This document shows, piece by piece, positions 30,056 to 38,370 of a DNA stretch of 64,000 bases. The number at the start of each line of letters is the position of its first letter. Position 1 is the first letter of the stretch. Below the pieces are notes generated by a model. It was not told the DNA's origin, searched no databases, and saw only the letters and a list, made by a program, of their open reading frames with translations. The translations under genes and the position numbers were made by a program. The DNA is from Saccostrea cucullata (lineage: Eukaryota), in contig NW_026921914.1 in NCBI RefSeq assembly GCF_032062105.1, positions 1 through 64,000 on the forward strand, read 5' to 3'.

Positions 30056-31495
30056 GATATTAAAATACACCTCTCTTAACCTAGCTTGCTTGCTGGCTCA
30101 TACAATACTTTGTGATTGTTATATCATTTATTCTGAAATTATTGTTATTTCATACTTTAATTACTTAGTAATGCCTATATTTCTTAACATTTCTCGGATA
30201 TTATTTTATAAGATGTTCTTCCTTCATTTTGTATTACATATGACATTTTCGTGTAAACTGTGATTATGGAATAATAATAGGAGGATTTTTCATTGCATTA
30301 CTTTAAAATAAAATGTATGGAGAAGCTAGTGATTAACTGCTTCCATGAATAATTCATATTGTGTGCAAGCTCACCTTGGATGGCACGGATGTGATCTGCA
30401 TGTCACATCTAACATGGATGTGACTTGCATGTCACATCTTGTGGCCTATTTTGTTTTTATGTGCCATCTTTTTGCTAACTTTTTCATATGATGTTTTCAT
30501 TGTCTTCTCTTACAGATACTTTTTTCTAGTCAGTTTTGGGGGATCAGACATTATCATATTTTACGTAACTGCTAATCAAAGCTTGTGAATCTGATCCCCT
30601 TCTTGTTTGTTAAATTGTTCACATTTATACCGTCATTTTAATAAATGACATTATTCATCTCTATGAAAGTGTTTTATTTGACTTATACAAAATTAGCAAA
30701 AACAAGCTGCGGTGAGCTTGCATATAAGCATAAGAATACATAAAACAACAATTTTTAGAATAATAATTGTATTTATGTATTGAATGCGATAACATAGTTT
30801 GAGGTTTCCGGTAGGATTAATTTTGGTAAAATATAAAAAATTCTTAGATCCACGCCTTGGTTGATGGATTACGTGTGATAGTAGGTGTAAAGTCACGTGG
30901 TCAGCTCAGCGAGTCATTCCGTTGTATTGTGATAACCCGCCTGCTGACCACGCTAAAATTAGAGGCACGTCTATTTTGAAGACCCTCCTCCACTCCTGCA
31001 TTCCTACCCCTTAAAATAGGTATTAGTGTGTCATGCAAAATCATATATTTCATTAGTTCTGACTCGATTTGTTTATACTGTTTTTATGTATTTTGTTTCA
31101 CTATTATCCTTGGGCTAGGCCTATTTTGTTTTTATGTGCCATCTTTTTATTAACTTTTTCATATGATGTTTTCATTGTCTTGTCTTACAGATACTTTTTT
31201 CTAGTCAGTTTTGGGGGATCAGACATTATCATTTTTTACGTAACTGCTAATCAAAGCTTGTGAATCTGATCCCCTTCTTGTTTGTTAAATTGTTCACATT
31301 TATACCATCATTTTAATAAATGACATTATTCATCTCTATGAAAGTGTTTTATTTGACTTATACAAAATTAGCAAAAACAAGCTGCGGTGAGCTTGCATAT
31401 AAGCATAAGAATACATAAATATAATTTACTTGGGACGCTTGGTCTTACTTTAACCTATACATTTTAAATCCAAGTTGTCGCATTTCAGCTGCTCG

Positions 31496-31561: not shown

Positions 31562-34011
31562 TTAATAAAATGACAGGATGATCTTTTTACTTCGTTACAA
31601 AGCAAACATTAAAATAAAAGATCTTTTTTCTCTTTATGCCCTGTAATGTATATTATTTGGACACAGACAGTGGGGGTGTATAGTAACACTTTAGTACTCT
31701 TATCTCCCTTAAAATGATTGACAACAGAATTACATGCTTAGTAATGATAAAAAAAAATCAATACTGAAATAGTTCTTGTTCTAAAGTAAATATTTATTTA
31801 GTGCATCAAAAGTAATACCGCCGAATTTAAGGTATCAGAATTGATAACGACATACAACTAAAAAAAGAGAAAAAAAATGATAGGAAATACATGTTCATTT
31901 TTTTCAAATTAATTAGTAGCCAAAATAATATTTTAAAGTTGACTTTTTTTATCGAATGCGTTTGTATGCTTGTACATGTACACACACATATGTATTTTAA
32001 ACAAATTTGATAGAAATGGGTGTCATTTGATGTAATTAACTTATTTCTTTTATTAAAAAAAACATGATATATATTTTTTAATATTTTTAAATCAAAATAT
32101 ACCTTGGAGACCTGCTTATGTCTTGCTAGCTGCAGAACTGTAGCTCTCCGAAAAAAAATATTTTTGTTCGATTGTATGTCATAAAATAGAACTTTTACTT
32201 ACAAGAACACATTTGGTGTATTTCATTTGAATTAACCGTGTTTTCAGAATTTTTTATTTGTAAAATAATTGATTCACTGCATGCATAGTATTAAAAACTT
32301 TGAATGGAATTCTAAATGAATAATTTAATCTCATGTGCTCATGTAACGAAGAAAGACTAATTAAAATAGCATCGACCTGAATTCGTGTTACATATGTCGT
32401 ATAAAGTCTGAGCTGCATTTAATCAAAGTTTTAGTGCAGGATCTAAGCATACGTACATGCATATTCCCGAGGAAAATACACATTTTGTTTTAGATCAGAG
32501 AATCGACAGCAGAAACACGAAATAGATACAATAATTTCCTAGCGTATTTCTTGTTAATTAACGGAAAACATTCTTTTCTCAAGTGTTATTCATGTTTTAC
32601 TTTTTCTATTGAAAATGTTCATTGAAAGCTGCCACCCCCCCCCCCCAAAAAAAACACACACACAGTTTATACTACGGTAAAGTTATATAAGGGAAATGTA
32701 GTATTGTATGCCAAGGAACTGGTACTGAAATAAGTAGCTTTTCGACTTTGGGCAAGGTTTTTCTTTGCTTGTCAACTTTTCCAGGTAAGAAAAAACATAT
32801 TTCTTTGGCTGCCCCCCCCCCCCCCACTTTTAAAGACGATGATACGTGCCTGGCTAATTCGTATAGCTTTCTAGAAAGGGGGGGGGGGCAACAGACCCTT
32901 TATAAAATCGCTTATTATCTAAAAAAAAAATTGCAAACCGTTTCCTTCTTTTAAAATTTTTAATGCAGCGTGTAAGTTGATCACTATTTTGTTGGATTAT
33001 CGTAACGTGTAGTCCGCGGAAGTTGTGCTAGTGTAGAAGAGTTCCGATTTTTAGGGGAGATAACTCACTTTTGAAAATGGGGAATATGGTCAAAATTTAA
33101 AACAAGGCTTGTTGTATATGCACCTTAATGTTATCTTATGATAACATTTATTAAGGAAATTATAACAGCTGTCACATTTTTCTCAACTTTTTAGACCTCC
33201 TTTAAGAAGAAGATATGCGTATTTACTGATATTGTATTCACCTTTTAAATTTTGGGAATGCAGGTGTTTTCAAAAAATGCTCAACTACTTTAAATGCATA
33301 TGCATAGATAAAATTTGATAAAGCAATCCTCGTAATCTCTATTCGTTCAGAGGTTTCACATGCTCAAGCAATGACGACTATAAGGAAATGATTTTAAAAA
33401 CTTTAAAAATAAAAGAACAAGGACGATGGCAAAGACAATGGCACTGGTTTTGAAAACACTTTTATTTTGGATTGTATGGATTACAGCATTTTCCGGTAAG
33501 AGAAAAAAGCTTTTACTGCTTAAGAAAATAATGAATTGCATTTTGTATTGTTTTTTGAGAAGGCAGATTACCATTCAAACCTGACAAAATCCTTGTTCTG
33601 CAAAAAAAAAAAAAAAAAAAAAAAAGAAAAAAAAAGTTCACTAGAAAACCCTTAAATTGCAGTAAAGGTGAGATATATTCCATCTACTTTCACAAGAAAG
33701 CAAAATTCTTGAACATACGATAATTTGACCTTTCTTCAAAACATTGGGGGAAAAAGGTTCAATCGTCCTTTCAATAAAATTTAGAAAATTAAATTAACAG
33801 TAAAAGATTTTTTCGACAAAAGTCCCCCATAATTACTTACCAGTTTTATGAATGGCGTATCTGTAAAACAGAGAAATGCATTACAACAATTTCTCTGGAA
33901 AACGTCTGCAACATAAAGTAAAAGACATAGATGTTACTGTCTTGGTTTCATTGAAACTGCCGAATAACATGCTTTAACATTCCCTAAAATAAAATCTATT
34001 ATAGTATATAC

Positions 34012-36093
34012 TGTAACGTGCAACGCGGCCGAGCTTGGTGTTTGGTGATATGTCTTGCATCACCGAGGCGTTACACTTAGGTTCGTTAACCTGTTAACTC
34101 AGATTTTTGTTGACCAATGCGATTATAATCAAATATATACAAATACAATGGCTCTCTTCTAGATTGGACAACCACTAACTGTGGTCGACGGGTGTCTCCC
34201 GCAATGAATTACTTCGGTCCTGCCACTTCACAAGTACTGCTGCATCTTGGCACTTCCCCCACTTCTATCTGTGGTATGCCACCTCTCTCTACAACCAAGT
34301 GACTGCCTTATTCAGGTCTTACGTGCATTGTTGTACGGTGGAACACTTAGCCGTTTATCCCCTGCATCCGTCTGCCTTATTCAGGTCTTACAAACGTATG
34401 CAAGAGAAGAAACAAACTAATGTTTATCCACTCCGTCACAAGAGAGGTCCCCTGAGTTCCCGTAACACAACATGTATTACCTCAGTGCAGCCCCGTACAT
34501 AGGCAGTTTCATACTACTTGTATGACCTGAGAATTAATATTTTTAAGCGTTTAAGAATTCATATAAAAACTTAAGTCTAACTTTAAAACGAAACTAAATC
34601 ACGAAACCAAATTCCGTTTCATTACCCTCCCCTTAAGATTATATGTGTCCAGCATATGATTAACTATTTACAATTTTTTTTACATCTATATACAATTCTT
34701 TGCATTGCCTGACAATTTGTGACATCTCCCTAGGCATCGATGAATGTATCTTTGGTCAGAGTTTCTCGCACATCACCAGGTGCTGATGCGTAGGCCAAAT
34801 TGTTAATCGTCTAATAACCTGACCTAACTCTGGTATAGACTCAGATGCGCTTTGCCATCTTTCTTTAGCTTAACACGATACAGATCTGTTTGGTTAAGAG
34901 GGGAGAACCTCTCCTCAAGGGATCTGACCAGTGTCTTATAATGCTGACCAGTATCACTTGGTAAGTCACCTAACACTGACTGTGCTTTTCCACGCAGTGA
35001 TACAGCCAGGTAAAGACCCTTCTTATCTTCTGTCCAGCCGTTTACAACAGCACAAGCCTCAAAATGTGATTTGTAGTCAAGCCAGGAACTGGTTCCGTCA
35101 TACGTGGCTGGCTTGATTATATGGCCTGTCTTGGCATTGTCTGTCCCCATTGACTGCCCCCATGGTTTTGGCGTGTCAAATAGATGGCCCGTCACAATGT
35201 CGTCAACCCCAGCATGTGGTGTAAAGCTTGGTTTGCCTTCTTCTGGAAATCTAACTTTAGGCCGTGCGCCGTACTCGTCAAATGACACATCTCCTGACAT
35301 ACCGGCCGGTTGATAATCAGTACTGTGTGTCGCATATCCAGACTCTTGGCTTGTCGCATTTGTCTGACCATCGTTGCTGGTTGGCGTTCTCATCCTTTCC
35401 AAGATCTTCTCCCGCCGCTCGATAGTTTCTGACACTTTCTTATGTGAATCCATGGTCAACAAAATCCCACCGTTGCCACCAAATAATGTAACGTGCAACG
35501 CGGCCGAGCTTGGTGTTTGGTGATATGTCTTGCATCACCGAGGCGTTACACTTAGGTTCGTTAACCTGTTAACTCAGATTTTTGTTGACCAATGCGATTA
35601 TAATCAAATATATACAAATACAATGGCTTTCTTCTTGATTGGACAACCACTAACTGTGGTCGACAGGGTGTCTCCCGCAATGAATTACTTCGGTCCTGCC
35701 ACTTCACAAGTACTGCTGCATCTTGGCACTTCCCCCACTTCTATCTGTGGTATGCCACCTCTCTCTACAACCAAGTGACTGCCTTATTCAGGTCTTACGT
35801 GCATTGTTGTACTGTGGAACACTTAGCCGTTTATCCCCTGCATCCGTCTGCCTTATTCAGGTCTTACAAACGTATGCAAGAGAAGAAACAAACTAATGTT
35901 TATCCACTCCGTCACCAGAGAGGTCCCCTGAGTTCCCGTAACACAACATGTATTACCTCAGTGCAGCCCCGTACACAGTTTCATACTACTTGTATGACCT
36001 GAGAATTAATATTTTTTAGCGTTTAAGAATTTATATAAAAACGTAGGTCTAACTTTAAAACGAAACTAAATCACGAAACCAAATTCCGTTTCA
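34012..36093 (-). mobile_element. Internally deleted (non-autonomous) Ty3/Gypsy LTR retrotransposon
   Basis: LTRs 34012-34621 and 35487-36093 (TG..CA, ~98% identical); 4-bp TSD ATAC; PBS 35464-35481 (TGGTGGCAACGGTGGGAT on -, tRNA-Leu type); PPT AAGGGGAGGGTAA; only a truncated gag inside. Confidence 0.93.
34730..35453 (-). pseudogene. gag: Truncated, frameshifted Gypsy gag
   Basis: KPATYDGTSSWLDYKSHFEACAVVNGW..LRGKAQSVLG aligns by eye to the gag at 38371; after a frameshift at ~34865 homology continues to ..VRETLTKDTFIDAL, then breaks off. Confidence 0.85.
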
Positions 36094-37549
36094 ATACACT
36101 GTATAACAATAGTTTATAATTACTGTAAACGTGTTAAAATATACTAGAATCTTTATTGATACTTTAATTTTTATTATTTTAAGACATTTTATTCAGTGAT
36201 ACAAAGCTTGTCTAAAAAAAAAAAAACAGTGTACAAAAAAATTTAAATAATTTGTAAATATACAGGTGATAATATTTCCATTTAATAATAAAAAGATAAT
36301 GTGCATTTAAATAAAAGTGAGGTTTATTGAAAATAATCGTTGAAATAGAATTTTAATCCAAATTGAATATTTTCTTAGTCTTCCTTGGTCGAATTGTACC
36401 CCGATCCCATTTAATTGTTTAACACCAAAAGTAAAAGATAGAAATTACGTACGTTGTGTATTATAAATCTTACTGGCCATATATCATAAAAATTCTCTGT
36501 TGATTTTGTTTAAAGATCTAGAGTTTTGACACTAGATTTTTTAAATGTGTCTATACATTCTATTCCTTGGTAAACGTTCTACATTTCATAATCTATAGAA
36601 TCCCAATGTTTGGTCTAGGGCTGTGCAATATTACCGGTATATCGGTATATTGCGGTATTATCCACCACGATAATATATCACGATATGAAGGCCAGATACC
36701 GGTATTTCACGATATTTATAAGAATATATAAAAAAAACTCCTTCATTGTAGAAACTGCTGGAATAATACTTGTAACTTCCCCAGGCCTTTGAAATCTAGT
36801 TAAATGAATACTTCGTCAGCTTTCGAAGAGAGATAGAGAGAAGAGAGAGAGAGAGAGGAATCTTATCATTCACTGTTCACAATTTTAAATACCTTACTTA
36901 AAAAATAATAATTAATAAAGACTTTTGAATAAAATTATTTAGAAAGAAAATATATTAAACATTTCTACAGGGTGTATGCCATGTTTACCATGGTTCTCAA
37001 AATCTCGCATGGAATCTACACGGTCGATGTCACGATGATGAATGTTAAGTTCAAGATACATATTACAAGTAAATGGCCATCCATGTTTTCACTTGATACA
37101 GTGATGCTTTTATTATTTTTTAATAAGTTTCATGCCATTTTTAACAACTTCGTGCTATACTAGGAGCATGTGTATTAAAACAGTAGAAATAGGCCAGTGC
37201 AGTTCCTGATCGTTGGTCATAATGTGAAATTAGGTCGGGTTAGACTAAAACACAAAAAACGCCCGAAAATGTGTCACAATTTCTTTTGGCTTTAATTTCA
37301 TTCTGTGATCACATATAAAATTTTCATATACATGTAGTATGTATTGTTTTAATCATTAAGTTATATTCTGTGCTATTTCAATCACCCACCCCCCCCCCCC
37401 AAAAAAAAAAAACTTAAAAATGTAACAAGATTATATACTCTGTATTAACTTTTTTCAATTTCAAAATGCTTCAAGAGAGTTCACTTAGTTTTACATGTAT
37501 TATTTTACCTGGTATTTGATTAAAAGTAAAGTGTTATTATGTATGCAAT

Positions 37550-38252
37550 TGTGACAATTCCGGAATTTTAAGGTACGACCATGCAGAGTTCTCAATTAGT
37601 CATCGTTAACATCACGTGACTTTGATAGGGTATATATATCGAGACTCTGCAGTCGTCTGTGTCATTGTTGATGCGCCGGCCAAAGAGAGAAGACGAGTGT
37701 AAGTGTCATATGCATAAAGCATTGTTATTAATTCCTCGCCTGTTAATGCAGTTTAGAGAGTGAATTTGGAAGGCCATTTGAGGTTTGCCAAACCTGCTAT
37801 AAGGCCTGCCACAAACTTGGTTAACCTCAAGCAAAGAGGCTAGCCATAAAGTTCGTCTGCATTCGCTGACCAGTCCGTCCAGGCCGCTATACTCATTGTC
37901 CGTCCTGAATAAGGCATCCTACAGTGAGTGTAGTGGTTGAAGGGCTATCACATATACTGTCCGTCCTGAATAAGGCATCCTACAGTATATGCGGTAGTCC
38001 AAGGGCGACTGGCCTTGCATTTTAGTATTATTATTAATAGGTCTACCAGATAATTTATTGTTGCTTGCCTCTGATTGATTGTATTGATTCACCATTTGAT
38101 TATTGTTAACCTAGATAAGGTTAGGACGTATTTGTATATTTCGGCAGTCCTTTTTAATCATACCAATCAATTTTAAATCAGTTTATGTTTTACACCCCAA
38201 ACCCTGGAAATAACCAGGTACGATCCCATTGATTAATTGTAAATACGTTACA
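37550..38252 (+). repeat. 5' LTR
   Basis: TGTGAC...GTTACA; TATA box 37631-37638, Inr-like TCATT ~37662, GTAAGT donor 37699. Confidence 0.95.
37870..38012 (+). promoter_or_regulatory. Structured RNA element in LTR: three-way junction with two hairpins capped by an identical 21-nt apex (CCGUCCUGAAUAAGGCAUCCU)
   Basis: 17-bp stem 37883-37899/37921-37937 and 19-bp stem 37942-37960/37982-38000 with G-U pairs on the + strand; closing stem 37870-37880/38003-38012. Confidence 0.75.
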
Positions 38253-38258
38253 AAAATT

Positions 38259-38276
38259 TGGTGGCAGCGTCGGGAT
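38259..38276 (+). promoter_or_regulatory. Primer-binding site (tRNA-Leu type)
   Basis: TGGTGGCAGCGTCGGGAT, close to the complement of the 3' end of metazoan tRNA-Leu(AAG/TAG) as I recall it. Confidence 0.8.
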
Positions 38277-38370
38277 TTGGGGTTGCATTAAATCATTAAA
38301 GTTTATTATTATGTAGTTTTTGTCCAGGTTAATTGTAGTTCAGTTAAAGTTTATTTTGCAATTTTTCGAT

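What the first reader, a model, noticed from the sequence alone, without database searches (positions are those of the whole stretch)
35766..35898. Same CCTGAATAAGGCA motif, twice and again atop hairpins, in the LTR of a different Gypsy family
Seen: TGCCTTATTCAGG at 35780 and 35849 (also 34304 and 34373) equals CCTGAATAAGGCA on the element's sense (-) strand, 69 nt apart versus 61 nt in the full-length element. On the sense strand the 35849 copy folds as UGCAU-a-CGUUUG-[UAAGA bulge]-CCU-GAAUA-AGG-CAGACG-g-AUGCA and extends with many G-U pairs, a stem-bulge-stem-loop reminiscent of TAR. Upstream are a TATA box (36030-36037) and a GAG|GTAATA donor (35956). I could not align the rest of the two LTRs, so motif, copy number, structure and order persist while stems have turned over. 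This is the best internal evidence for function.
Basis: partly seen in the sequence, partly recalled or inferred. Interest (0 to 1): 0.82.

Follow-up and report, generated by a model that had tools for sequence, protein, structure and literature searches.

The report
Conserved boxB-like RNA hairpin in Gypsy LTRs
A short sequence that caps RNA hairpins has stayed unchanged in the terminal repeats of a whole clade of bivalve-type Gypsy retrotransposons while nearly everything around it changed, so it is probably a docking site on the element's RNA for a protein not yet identified.

Summary
CCTGAATAAGGCA occurs 8 times in the window (0.09 expected), twice in each LTR of two elements. It occurs 718 times in the genome, against 8 for the reversed control.

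The two LTRs are otherwise unalignable. The exceptions are their termini, a near-identical tRNA-Leu primer site and one further 12-mer. The elements are still kin: gag is 56% identical and they sit in one well-supported pol clade.

The invariant core is CUGAAUAAG: C-G and U-A pairs closing a GAAUA pentaloop. This is a GNRNA loop with a U-A closing pair, as in lambda boxB.

- **Spread:** it caps hairpins 1-3 times per LTR in at least 12 lineages. These include Pinctada imbricata and assemblies of other public sequencing runs.
- **Structure:** the third apical pair covaries (C-G, A-U, G-C, G.U, U-A). Loop position 4 varies and the lower stems turn over with compensatory changes.
- **Strand:** the folds are specific to the sense strand.
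- **Position:** it lies downstream of the TATA box, 97-99 nt in three lineages.
- **ORF3:** autonomous relatives of the small element lack the zinc-finger ORF3, so a Tat/TAR-type coupling is not required. It is also not excluded.

I read it as a conserved cis-acting RNA recognition hairpin. The step it serves (packaging, regulation or host-factor binding) is only inferred. One caveat: the second copy in the finding's own LTR has no extended stem.

The parts
35487..36093 (-). 5' LTR of the small gag-only Gypsy element (family B1), TG...ACGTTACA
   Evidence: Direct repeat with 34012-34621. Flanked by the 4-bp target-site duplication ATAC.
35827..35891 (-). Hairpin 1 of that LTR, with the motif at its apex
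Evidence: Minimum free energy -25.3 kcal/mol, z -4.29.
35849..35861 (-). Motif copy 1, CCUGAAUAAGGCA: CCU/AGG stem with a GAAUA pentaloop
35780..35792 (-). Motif copy 2: apical mini-hairpin only, with no significant lower stem in this copy
   Evidence: z +1.16. Sister families pair ACCAA/UUGGU-type flanks here.
35899..35904 (-). GAUAAA hexamer followed by a U-rich tract, about 40 nt upstream of motif 1. It is AAUAAA in some sister subfamilies. Possible poly(A) signal (inferred).
   Evidence: L014 and L143 have AATAAA at this place.
36030..36037 (-). TATA-like box upstream of the hairpins
35610..35621 (-). Second conserved island, GTATTTGTATAT, 158 nt downstream of motif 2
35464..35481 (-). Primer binding site TGGTGGCAACGGTGGGAT, one mismatch to the 3' end of host tRNA-Leu
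34827..35453 (-). Truncated gag ORF (209 aa, no zinc knuckle, no pol). The element is non-autonomous.
   Evidence: It is 90% identical to the gag of the autonomous L145.
34012..34621 (-). 3' LTR of the small element, with motif copies at 34373-34385 and 34304-34316
   Evidence: 8 mismatches and 2 indels against the 5' LTR.
37550..38252 (+). 5' LTR of the full-length Gypsy element (family A)
   Evidence: 3 differences in 702 nt against the 3' LTR.
37882..37939 (+). Family A hairpin 1 (motif at 37904-37916)
   Evidence: -31.0 kcal/mol, z -5.25. Compensatory changes within the A group.
37942..38000 (+). Family A hairpin 2 (motif at 37965-37977)
   Evidence: -28.2 kcal/mol, z -3.95..
38320..43302 (+). 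gag-pol ORF of family A: one CCHC knuckle at aa 371, then PR, RT, RNase H, IN
43374..44060 (+). ORF3, a two-zinc-finger accessory protein. Conserved in most of the clade, absent from the B/C families.
44228..44929 (+). 3' LTR of family A, with motif copies at 44582-44594 and 44643-44655

Best explanation
The 13-mer is the apex of a conserved RNA stem-loop on the sense transcript of the LTR.

**What it is.** Its universal core is CUGAAUAAG. Two invariant base pairs (C-G, U-A) close a GAAUA pentaloop, a GNRNA loop of the kind that folds like a GNRA tetraloop with its fourth base turned out. Below the core lies a freely covarying third pair, then an internal loop or bulge, then a long lower stem that evolves fast.

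**Where it is.** One to three such hairpins sit in the LTR, downstream of the TATA box and 230-480 nt before the tRNA-Leu primer site. They occur throughout one clade of bivalve-type Ty3/Gypsy elements.

**What is shown.** Presence, conservation, structure, strand, and position relative to TATA and the primer site.

**What is inferred.** The hairpin is a docking site for a trans-acting protein on the 5' leader (R or U5) of the element's RNA. Autonomous elements and their gag-only parasites all need it in cis. My preferred step is recognition of the genomic RNA by Gag, through its single CCHC knuckle and basic flanks, for packaging or dimerisation. This would resemble the paired GACG hairpins of gammaretroviruses. 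Within this explanation I give that specific step only about 1 in 3.
For: **Enrichment.** 8 copies in the window against 0.09 expected. 718 in the genome against 8 for the control, and 290 spaced pairs against 2. Nearly all sampled contexts are LTRs, always in the sense orientation.

**Island of identity.** The motif words are the only words of 9 nt or more shared by at least 8 of 10 LTR families; shuffled LTRs share none. The A and B1 LTRs are otherwise at shuffle level.

**Depth of conservation.** The hairpin is present in 12 of 15 scored rows of a pol tree, and one gain or loss is enough to explain the pattern. The carriers are:
- families A, E, B2, B3 and C1 in this genome;
- the D solo LTRs;
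- three families of Pinctada imbricata;
- assembled contigs of other public sequencing runs, L051, L149 and L153.

**Structure.**
- The motif is apical in 23 of 33 independent contexts, many with z between -3 and -8.
- In the A group 94% of cells are paired, against at most 45% when the pairing is slid. The covariation score is 0.149 against 0.064, and 0 of 500 shuffles reached it.
- The D group has a UA/AU swap.
- The third apical pair is C-G, A-U, G-C, G.U or U-A. Loop position 4 is U or C (A in one decayed copy), and one loop reads GCAUA. This is what a GNRNA fold predicts.

**Strand.** The sense fold is more stable than the antisense fold in 27 of 32 contexts (P = 3e-5). G.U pairs number 99 of 681 on the sense strand against 52 of 617 on the antisense. 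The asymmetry is -3.6 kcal/mol near the motif against -0.75 in other LTR windows (P = 2e-5), with G+T close to 0.5.

**Position.** The hairpin lies 97-99 nt after a clear TATA box in Pin146, Pin147 and L153. In the two Pinctada LTRs the TATA box follows 3-4 CCAAT boxes.

**Cis requirement.** Abundant gag-only elements with no NC or pol keep the hairpins.
Against: - No transcript ends could be mapped. Poly(A) RNA-seq gave only 13-18 reads per run, mostly partial matches. The transcription start, the poly(A) site and the R-versus-U5 assignment are therefore inferred from sequence alone.
- No binding partner has been tested.
- The second hairpin of the B families has a weak or absent lower stem.
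- Two related lineages (L055, L148) lack the motif. One of them has another repeated hairpin in the same place, so the apex can be replaced.
- A Gag partner would be expected to co-evolve with its site, yet the apex is invariant across 40-50% pol divergence. That fits a conserved host partner at least as well.
- The zinc-knuckle sequences do differ between lineages with and without the hairpin, but this difference is confounded with phylogeny.
Confidence: 0.6

Rival explanations
1. It is a promoter-proximal regulatory hairpin of the TAR or boxB type. The ORF3 two-zinc-finger protein, alone or with a host factor, binds the nascent hairpins. This raises transcript output or lets transcription read through the poly(A) signal of the 5' LTR. 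ORF3-less B/C elements and the gag-only parasites would use ORF3 supplied in trans by A/E elements in the same genome.
For: - The hairpins lie about 65-70 nt downstream of the inferred start site in three lineages.
- PAS-like hexamers followed by GU/U-rich tracts lie just upstream of the hairpins in families E and D, in L149 and in some B subfamilies.
- The apex follows the boxB rule for peptide recognition.
- ORF3 is conserved (two zinc fingers plus further motifs). It co-occurs with the hairpin in A, E, L051, L149, L153 and three Pinctada families.
- In this genome the ORF3-less B/C families keep exactly the A/E version of the 13-mer.
Against: - The autonomous B2, B3 and C1 elements have no ORF3 and no room for one, yet keep the hairpins.
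- L033, a copy of family A, lacks ORF3.
- L148 has an ORF3 homologue but no hairpin was found.
- Nothing shows that ORF3 binds RNA.
- Splicing and expression could not be seen.
Confidence: 0.17
2. It is a binding site for a conserved host RNA-binding protein that decides the fate of the element's RNA: nuclear export of unspliced RNA, stability, translation, or choice of poly(A) site. No element-encoded partner is involved.
For: The 9-nt core is invariant across 40-50% pol divergence and across host species. The host-dictated tRNA primer site is equally invariant. The duplicated arrangement recalls export elements with repeated motifs (my own knowledge, not tested here).
Against: Almost no copies were sampled outside LTRs: 2 of about 74 contexts, close to the control rate. 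There is therefore no sign of a host regulon that uses the hairpin. No candidate protein has been identified.
Confidence: 0.15
3. It is a DNA-level enhancer: the motif is a transcription-factor site in tandem LTR repeats, and the hairpin potential is incidental.
For: Tandem 61-69-bp repeats in LTRs are classical enhancers. If the conserved TTTGTATATATTTG block about 115 nt from the LTR end is the real TATA box, the motifs would lie in U3.
Against: - The folding advantage is strand-specific, with an excess of G.U pairs.
- Compensatory changes at the third apical pair and in the lower stems change the DNA word but keep the pairing.
- The orientation is fixed.
- In Pin146 and Pin147 a CCAAT(x3-4)-TATA promoter lies upstream of the hairpin.
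Confidence: 0.05
4. It is a poly(A) signal: the AAUAAG inside the motif is the hexamer.
For: The A and B1 LTRs contain no AATAAA or ATTAAA at all.
Against: In Pin147 the loop reads GAACA, which gives AACAAG. Conservation also covers CUG and the paired partners, which a hexamer does not need. Other families have canonical AAUAAA elsewhere in the LTR. By my own knowledge, AAUAAG is not a recognised variant hexamer.
Confidence: 0.03

Closest known systems
Bacteriophage lambda boxB (nut-site hairpin bound by the arginine-rich N peptide)
   Same: A GNRNA pentaloop closed by a U-A pair on a short stem, with loop position 4 free to vary, read by a protein on nascent RNA soon after the promoter (rule quoted; class reviewed). 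From memory, the core CUGAA-N-AAG equals the lambda boxB apex.
   Different: This is a eukaryotic retrotransposon LTR, not a phage nut site. It has long lower stems with internal loops and 1-3 copies. No N-like peptide has been identified, and common descent is not implied.
GACG-tetraloop hairpin pair of gamma- and alpharetroviral packaging regions
   Same: Adjacent hairpins share one conserved loop while their stems differ. The pair is conserved across a retroelement lineage and is involved in RNA packaging and dimerisation (review).
   Different: The loop here is GAAUA, not GACG. The hairpins lie inside the LTR, upstream of the primer site, not between the primer site and gag. Their function here is untested.
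Lentiviral TAR (HIV-1; duplicated in HIV-2)
   Same: Structured hairpin(s) downstream of the LTR promoter with a conserved apex and covarying stems. An accessory gene is present in many members.
   Different: There is no Rfam match. The hairpin does not start at +1. The apex has a different architecture. The hairpin persists in families that have no accessory gene.

Membership tests
Ty3/Gypsy LTR retrotransposon (both elements) | LTRs with TG...CA ends, target-site duplication, tRNA primer site, polypurine tract, and gag-PR-RT-RH-IN order | tested here: met
   The small element has LTRs, a TSD (ATAC), a primer site, a polypurine tract and a gag fragment only.
Lentiviral TAR (Rfam families) | Match to a curated covariance model | tested here: not met
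   No Rfam hit at E<=1 over 33500-45500, both strands.
Lentiviral TAR | The hairpin starts at the first transcribed base, and an element-encoded transactivator is needed | tested here: not met
   The hairpin lies 97-99 nt after TATA, so about +65 or later. The B/C families have no accessory ORF. The start site itself is inferred.
boxB-type GNRNA hairpin (structural class) | Pentaloop G-N-R-N-A with a U-A closing pair and tolerated change at loop position 4 | tested here: met
   The loop is GAAUA in all lineages. Variants are GAACA, GCAUA and GAAAA. The closing U-A and the next C-G pair are invariant. The 3D fold itself was not tested.
boxB-type GNRNA hairpin | Bound by an arginine-rich peptide | not testable with these tools
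   No protein-RNA tool is offered. Gag has basic tracts around one CCHC knuckle.
Retroviral GACG hairpin-pair packaging motif | GACG tetraloops, located between the primer site and gag | tested here: not met
   The loop is GAAUA, and the hairpins lie 230-480 nt upstream of the primer site, inside the LTR.
Canonical poly(A) signal | AAUAAA or AUUAAA kept at the site | tested here: not met
   The motif has AAUAAG. The Pin147 variant gives AACAAG.

The most novel reading that the evidence does not exclude
This invertebrate Ty3/Gypsy clade runs a 'complex-retrovirus-like' regulatory axis. Its conserved two-zinc-finger ORF3 protein reads boxB-like GNRNA hairpins on the nascent LTR transcript and controls elongation, poly(A)-site read-through or RNA export. 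ORF3-less families and gag-only parasites in the same genome keep the identical hairpin in order to borrow that factor.
Probability: 0.15. Interest if true: 0.85.

Novelty: new variant of a known kind. Interest (0 to 1): 0.55.

Why it matters
Conserved cis-acting RNA signals are well mapped in vertebrate retroviruses and hardly at all in invertebrate LTR retrotransposons. This one is short, sharply defined and testable.

- It has comparative support across families, species and autonomous/parasitic pairs.
- It has a clear structural rule: a GNRNA loop, a U-A closing pair and a free third pair.
- It gives a handle for finding what selects these elements' RNA, in a group of animals where LTR elements are highly active.
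- It offers a ready-made marker for annotating LTRs of this clade.
- If the partner turns out to be the clade's ORF3 protein, it would be an accessory-gene/RNA-target pair outside the retroviruses.

Tried and rejected
- **RNA evidence.** Three oligo-dT raw-read runs gave 13-18 reads each, mostly partial. A 'metatranscriptomic' contig run also covers intergenic DNA, so it is probably DNA-contaminated. No starts, ends or joints could be used.
- **Rfam.** No family matched.
- **Literature search for the 11-mer.** Only unrelated primer and sequence hits.
- **Metagenome scan for spaced pairs of the core.** Of 75 loci, almost all are unrelated: CRISPR-like arrays and bacterial hairpins. Only L075, L083 and L137 look faintly LTR-like, and I did not pursue them.
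- **Second contact with the primer tRNA.** The host tRNA-Leu (AAG/TAG) genes were found and the primer site confirmed. The motif has no complementarity of 6 nt or more to them. There is only a 7-nt same-sense identity with the anticodon loop (about P = 0.03, post hoc).
- **Poly(A)-signal reading.** Rejected because of the GAACA variant.
- **Conserved splice donor upstream.** Not conserved in sister families.
- **Loop pairing with the linker before the primer site.** Possible in family B only, not in A, E or Pinctada, so dropped.
- **DNA not retrievable.** Two ENA look-ups returned no DNA.
- **Limits I kept.** Broken pol genes entered the tree only as their single longest aligned piece.
Full report
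**What is at the locus**

Two LTR retrotransposons lie side by side.

- **The small element** lies on the - strand.
  - Its 5' LTR is 35487-36093 and its 3' LTR is 34012-34621. The LTRs differ by 8 mismatches and 2 indels, and the element is flanked by a 4-bp duplication, ATAC.
  - Its primer site is TGGTGGCAACGGTGGGAT.
  - Its only ORF is a 209-aa gag fragment, with no zinc knuckle, protease or polymerase. It is therefore non-autonomous.
- **The full-length element (family A)** lies on the + strand.
  - Its LTRs are 37550-38252 and 44228-44929, and they differ at 3 of 702 positions.
  - Its 1660-aa gag-pol carries one CCHC knuckle, then PR, RT, RNase H and IN. A 228-aa ORF3 has weak C2H2 zinc-finger hits.

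The best named protein relatives are from the pearl oyster Pinctada imbricata, at 59-64% identity. The genome is probably a bivalve's, but I did not identify it.

**The observation**

- CCTGAATAAGGCA occurs 8 times in the window, twice per LTR, against 0.09 expected.
- Genome-wide it occurs 718 times against 8 for the reversed control. Pairs of the core spaced 48-76 nt apart occur 290 times against 2.
The two family A hairpins are stronger still (z = -5.25 and -3.95).
- The second copy in the finding's own LTR (35780) has only the 3-bp apical stem (z = +1.16).

**Is the motif an island?**

- MAFFT cannot align the two LTR families.
- With the motif masked, local alignment scores equal shuffles upstream of it (P = 0.59) and between the copies (P = 0.21). 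Downstream there is one further exact 12-mer, GTATTTGTATAT, at nearly the same distance in both (150 and 158 nt; P = 0.01).
- An alignment-free comparison of ten LTR families gives the same answer. The only words of 9 nt or more shared by at least eight of them are words of the motif, and shuffled LTRs share none.
- The families are nevertheless related. The gag fragment is 56% identical to family A gag over 87 aa. Both LTRs end in ACGTTACA. Both primer sites match the 3' end of the host's tRNA-Leu (AAG/TAG); I found those genes in the genome.

**How widely it is kept**

| Lineage | Source | Hairpins per LTR | ORF3 |
|---|---|---|---|
| A, A-like subfamilies | this genome | 2 | present (absent in copy L033) |
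| E | this genome | 2 | present |
| D (about 715-bp solo LTRs) | this genome | 2 | not known |
| B1-B3 | this genome | 2 | absent |
| C1, C2 | this genome | C1: 2; C2: 1 found | absent in C1; C2 not known |
| L054 | Pinctada imbricata | 1 (exact 11-mer) | present |
| L146 | Pinctada imbricata | 1 (GACU-GAAUA-AGUC) | present |
| L147 | Pinctada imbricata | 1 (GGCU-GAACA-AGCC) | present |
| L051 | assembly of another public sequencing run | 2 | present |
| L149 | assembly of another public sequencing run | 3 | present |
| L153 | assembly of another public sequencing run | 2 | present |
| L055 | ENA assembly | none found | no ORF called |
| L148 | ENA assembly | none found | present |
| L152 (outgroup) | assembly of another public sequencing run | none found | unrelated ORF |

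In a maximum-likelihood tree of the RT-IN region, all carriers fall in one clade with 100/98 support. A single gain or loss explains the distribution.

L055 carries a different thrice-repeated hairpin at the equivalent place.

**What is conserved**

- The universal core is CUGAAUAAG: C-G and U-A pairs closing GAAUA.
- The next pair outward is C-G in this genome and A-U, G-C, G.U or U-A elsewhere.
- Loop position 4 is U, or C in L147 (A in one decayed copy). One C1 hairpin has GCAUA.
[quoted passage not shown] That is the rule reported for recognition of lambda boxB by the N peptide.
- Below the apex lie a family-specific internal loop or bulge (UAAGA in B/C, CCGU in A) and a lower stem of up to 20-27 pairs.

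**Evidence that the structure is selected, and on RNA**

- The motif is apical in the minimum-free-energy fold of 23 of 33 independent sequence contexts.
- In families A, E, L051 and D the strongest structure z-scores of the whole LTR fall on the motifs.
- In an A-group alignment 94% of cells pair, against at most 45% when the partners are slid. The covariation score is 0.149 against 0.064, with 0 of 500 shuffles reaching it. Four pairs carry double changes.
- The D group has a UA/AU swap and many G.U-to-G-C or A-U steps.
- The sense strand folds better than its complement in 27 of 32 contexts (P = 3e-5) and has twice the share of G.U pairs.
- The strand asymmetry is -3.6 kcal/mol near the motif against -0.75 in other windows of the same LTRs (P = 2e-5). 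G+T is about 0.5.
- A DNA protein site or a cruciform would not give this pattern.

**Position**

- In L146 and L147, three or four evenly spaced CCAATCA boxes precede a TATA box, and the hairpin follows 98-99 nt later. In L153 the distance from a strong TATA box is 97 nt.
- In the window's families the nearest strong TATA-like boxes lie 175-275 nt upstream of the first hairpin.
- The hairpins are therefore most likely transcribed near the 5' end of the RNA.
- Whether they lie in R or U5 is open. A canonical AAUAAA followed by a GU/U-rich tract lies between TATA and the hairpins in families E and D, in L149 and in some B subfamilies. At the same place stand GAUAAA in this LTR (35899-35904) and CAUAAA in family A. 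This leans towards U5.
- The conserved TTTGTATATATTTG block about 115 nt from the LTR end is unexplained.
- RNA-seq could not settle any of this.

**ORF3**

- ORF3 is a conserved protein with two zinc fingers and several further motifs.
- It is present in A, E, L051, L149, L153 and three Pinctada families, and also in hairpin-less L148.
- The autonomous relatives of the finding's own family lack it: L145 (intact 1662-aa ORF, gag 90% identical to the small element's), L142, L031 and L032. They have only about 110 nt between pol and the 3' LTR.
- One family A copy (L033) has lost it.
- The hairpin therefore does not need an ORF3 in cis. Supply in trans cannot be excluded.

**Reading**

I read this as a conserved cis-acting RNA recognition hairpin. 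It is needed by autonomous elements and by their abundant gag-only parasites.

- **Preferred step:** capture of genomic RNA by Gag. This is preferred weakly, by analogy with the retroviral GACG hairpin pair.
- **Live rivals:** a TAR- or boxB-like regulatory role with ORF3, and a host-factor site.
- **Disfavoured:** the enhancer and poly(A)-hexamer readings.

No Rfam family and no paper in the searchable library describes the motif.

**Limits**

- Transcript ends and partners are untested.
- Lineage sampling outside this genome is small.
- Several 'independent' contexts belong to related families.

Noticed in passing
35610-35621(-), 34135-34146(-), 38128-38139(+), 44806-44817(+): A second conserved LTR island, GTATTTGTATAT (TTGTATAT occurs in at least 8 of 10 LTR families). 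It lies 150-158 nt after motif 2 and about 115 nt before the LTR end. It could be a TATA-like or poly(A)-related element. Its function is unknown.
   Followed up: partly
L033 (G000:C1546:36800-46000) compared with window 43374-44060: A family A copy with 96-98% identical pol has no ORF3. Its LTR-to-LTR distance is 5923 nt against 6678 here, so ORF3 is present in some copies of one family and absent in others.
   Followed up: partly
G000:C7745:1099-4150 and G000:C5452:6696-9753: Gag-only small elements occur as LTR-internal-LTR-internal-LTR arrays (three LTRs about 1486 nt apart). They appear to be the commonest carriers of the motif.
   Followed up: no
L140:1739-2192, L141:1712-2163: A repeat of about 460 bp with no pol nearby carries three to four closely spaced mini-hairpins with the same apex (for example UUCCU-GAAUA-AGGAA), 19-29 nt apart. 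Its nature is unknown.
   Followed up: partly
L057:1501-1582(-), a tRNA-Leu(AAG) gene: The anticodon loop and the next base (UAAGGCA) are identical in the same sense to the 3' seven bases of the motif. About P = 0.03, noticed post hoc. Probably chance.
   Followed up: partly
L055:2400-2540: A related element without the motif carries three copies of another small hairpin (TATC-ATTGC-GATA inside a 21-nt repeat). They sit at the equivalent place, after TATA and AATAAAATAAA. The hairpin slot seems older than its apex.
   Followed up: partly
L065, L068, L077, L080, L098, L109, L127, L132 (soil metagenome contigs): Pairs of strong hairpins of the form AAAACCCCC-UGAAUAA-GGGGGUUUU, 75 nt apart, recur on unrelated, probably bacterial or phage contigs. 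Other loci (for example L063, L074, L095, L103) are arrays with a period of about 73 nt that contain the 11-mer, like CRISPR arrays.
   Followed up: no
window 30443-31417 and 48009-48711: A 675-nt tandem duplication (98% identical), and a repeat of about 430 nt that starts with AGGTCA-like direct repeats. Neither is part of these elements.
   Followed up: no
window 44925-44935: The 3' LTR of the full-length element ends in GTTAC, directly followed by GCAAT, which also precedes the 5' LTR. This gives a 5-bp duplication with the terminal A of the LTR missing.
   Followed up: no
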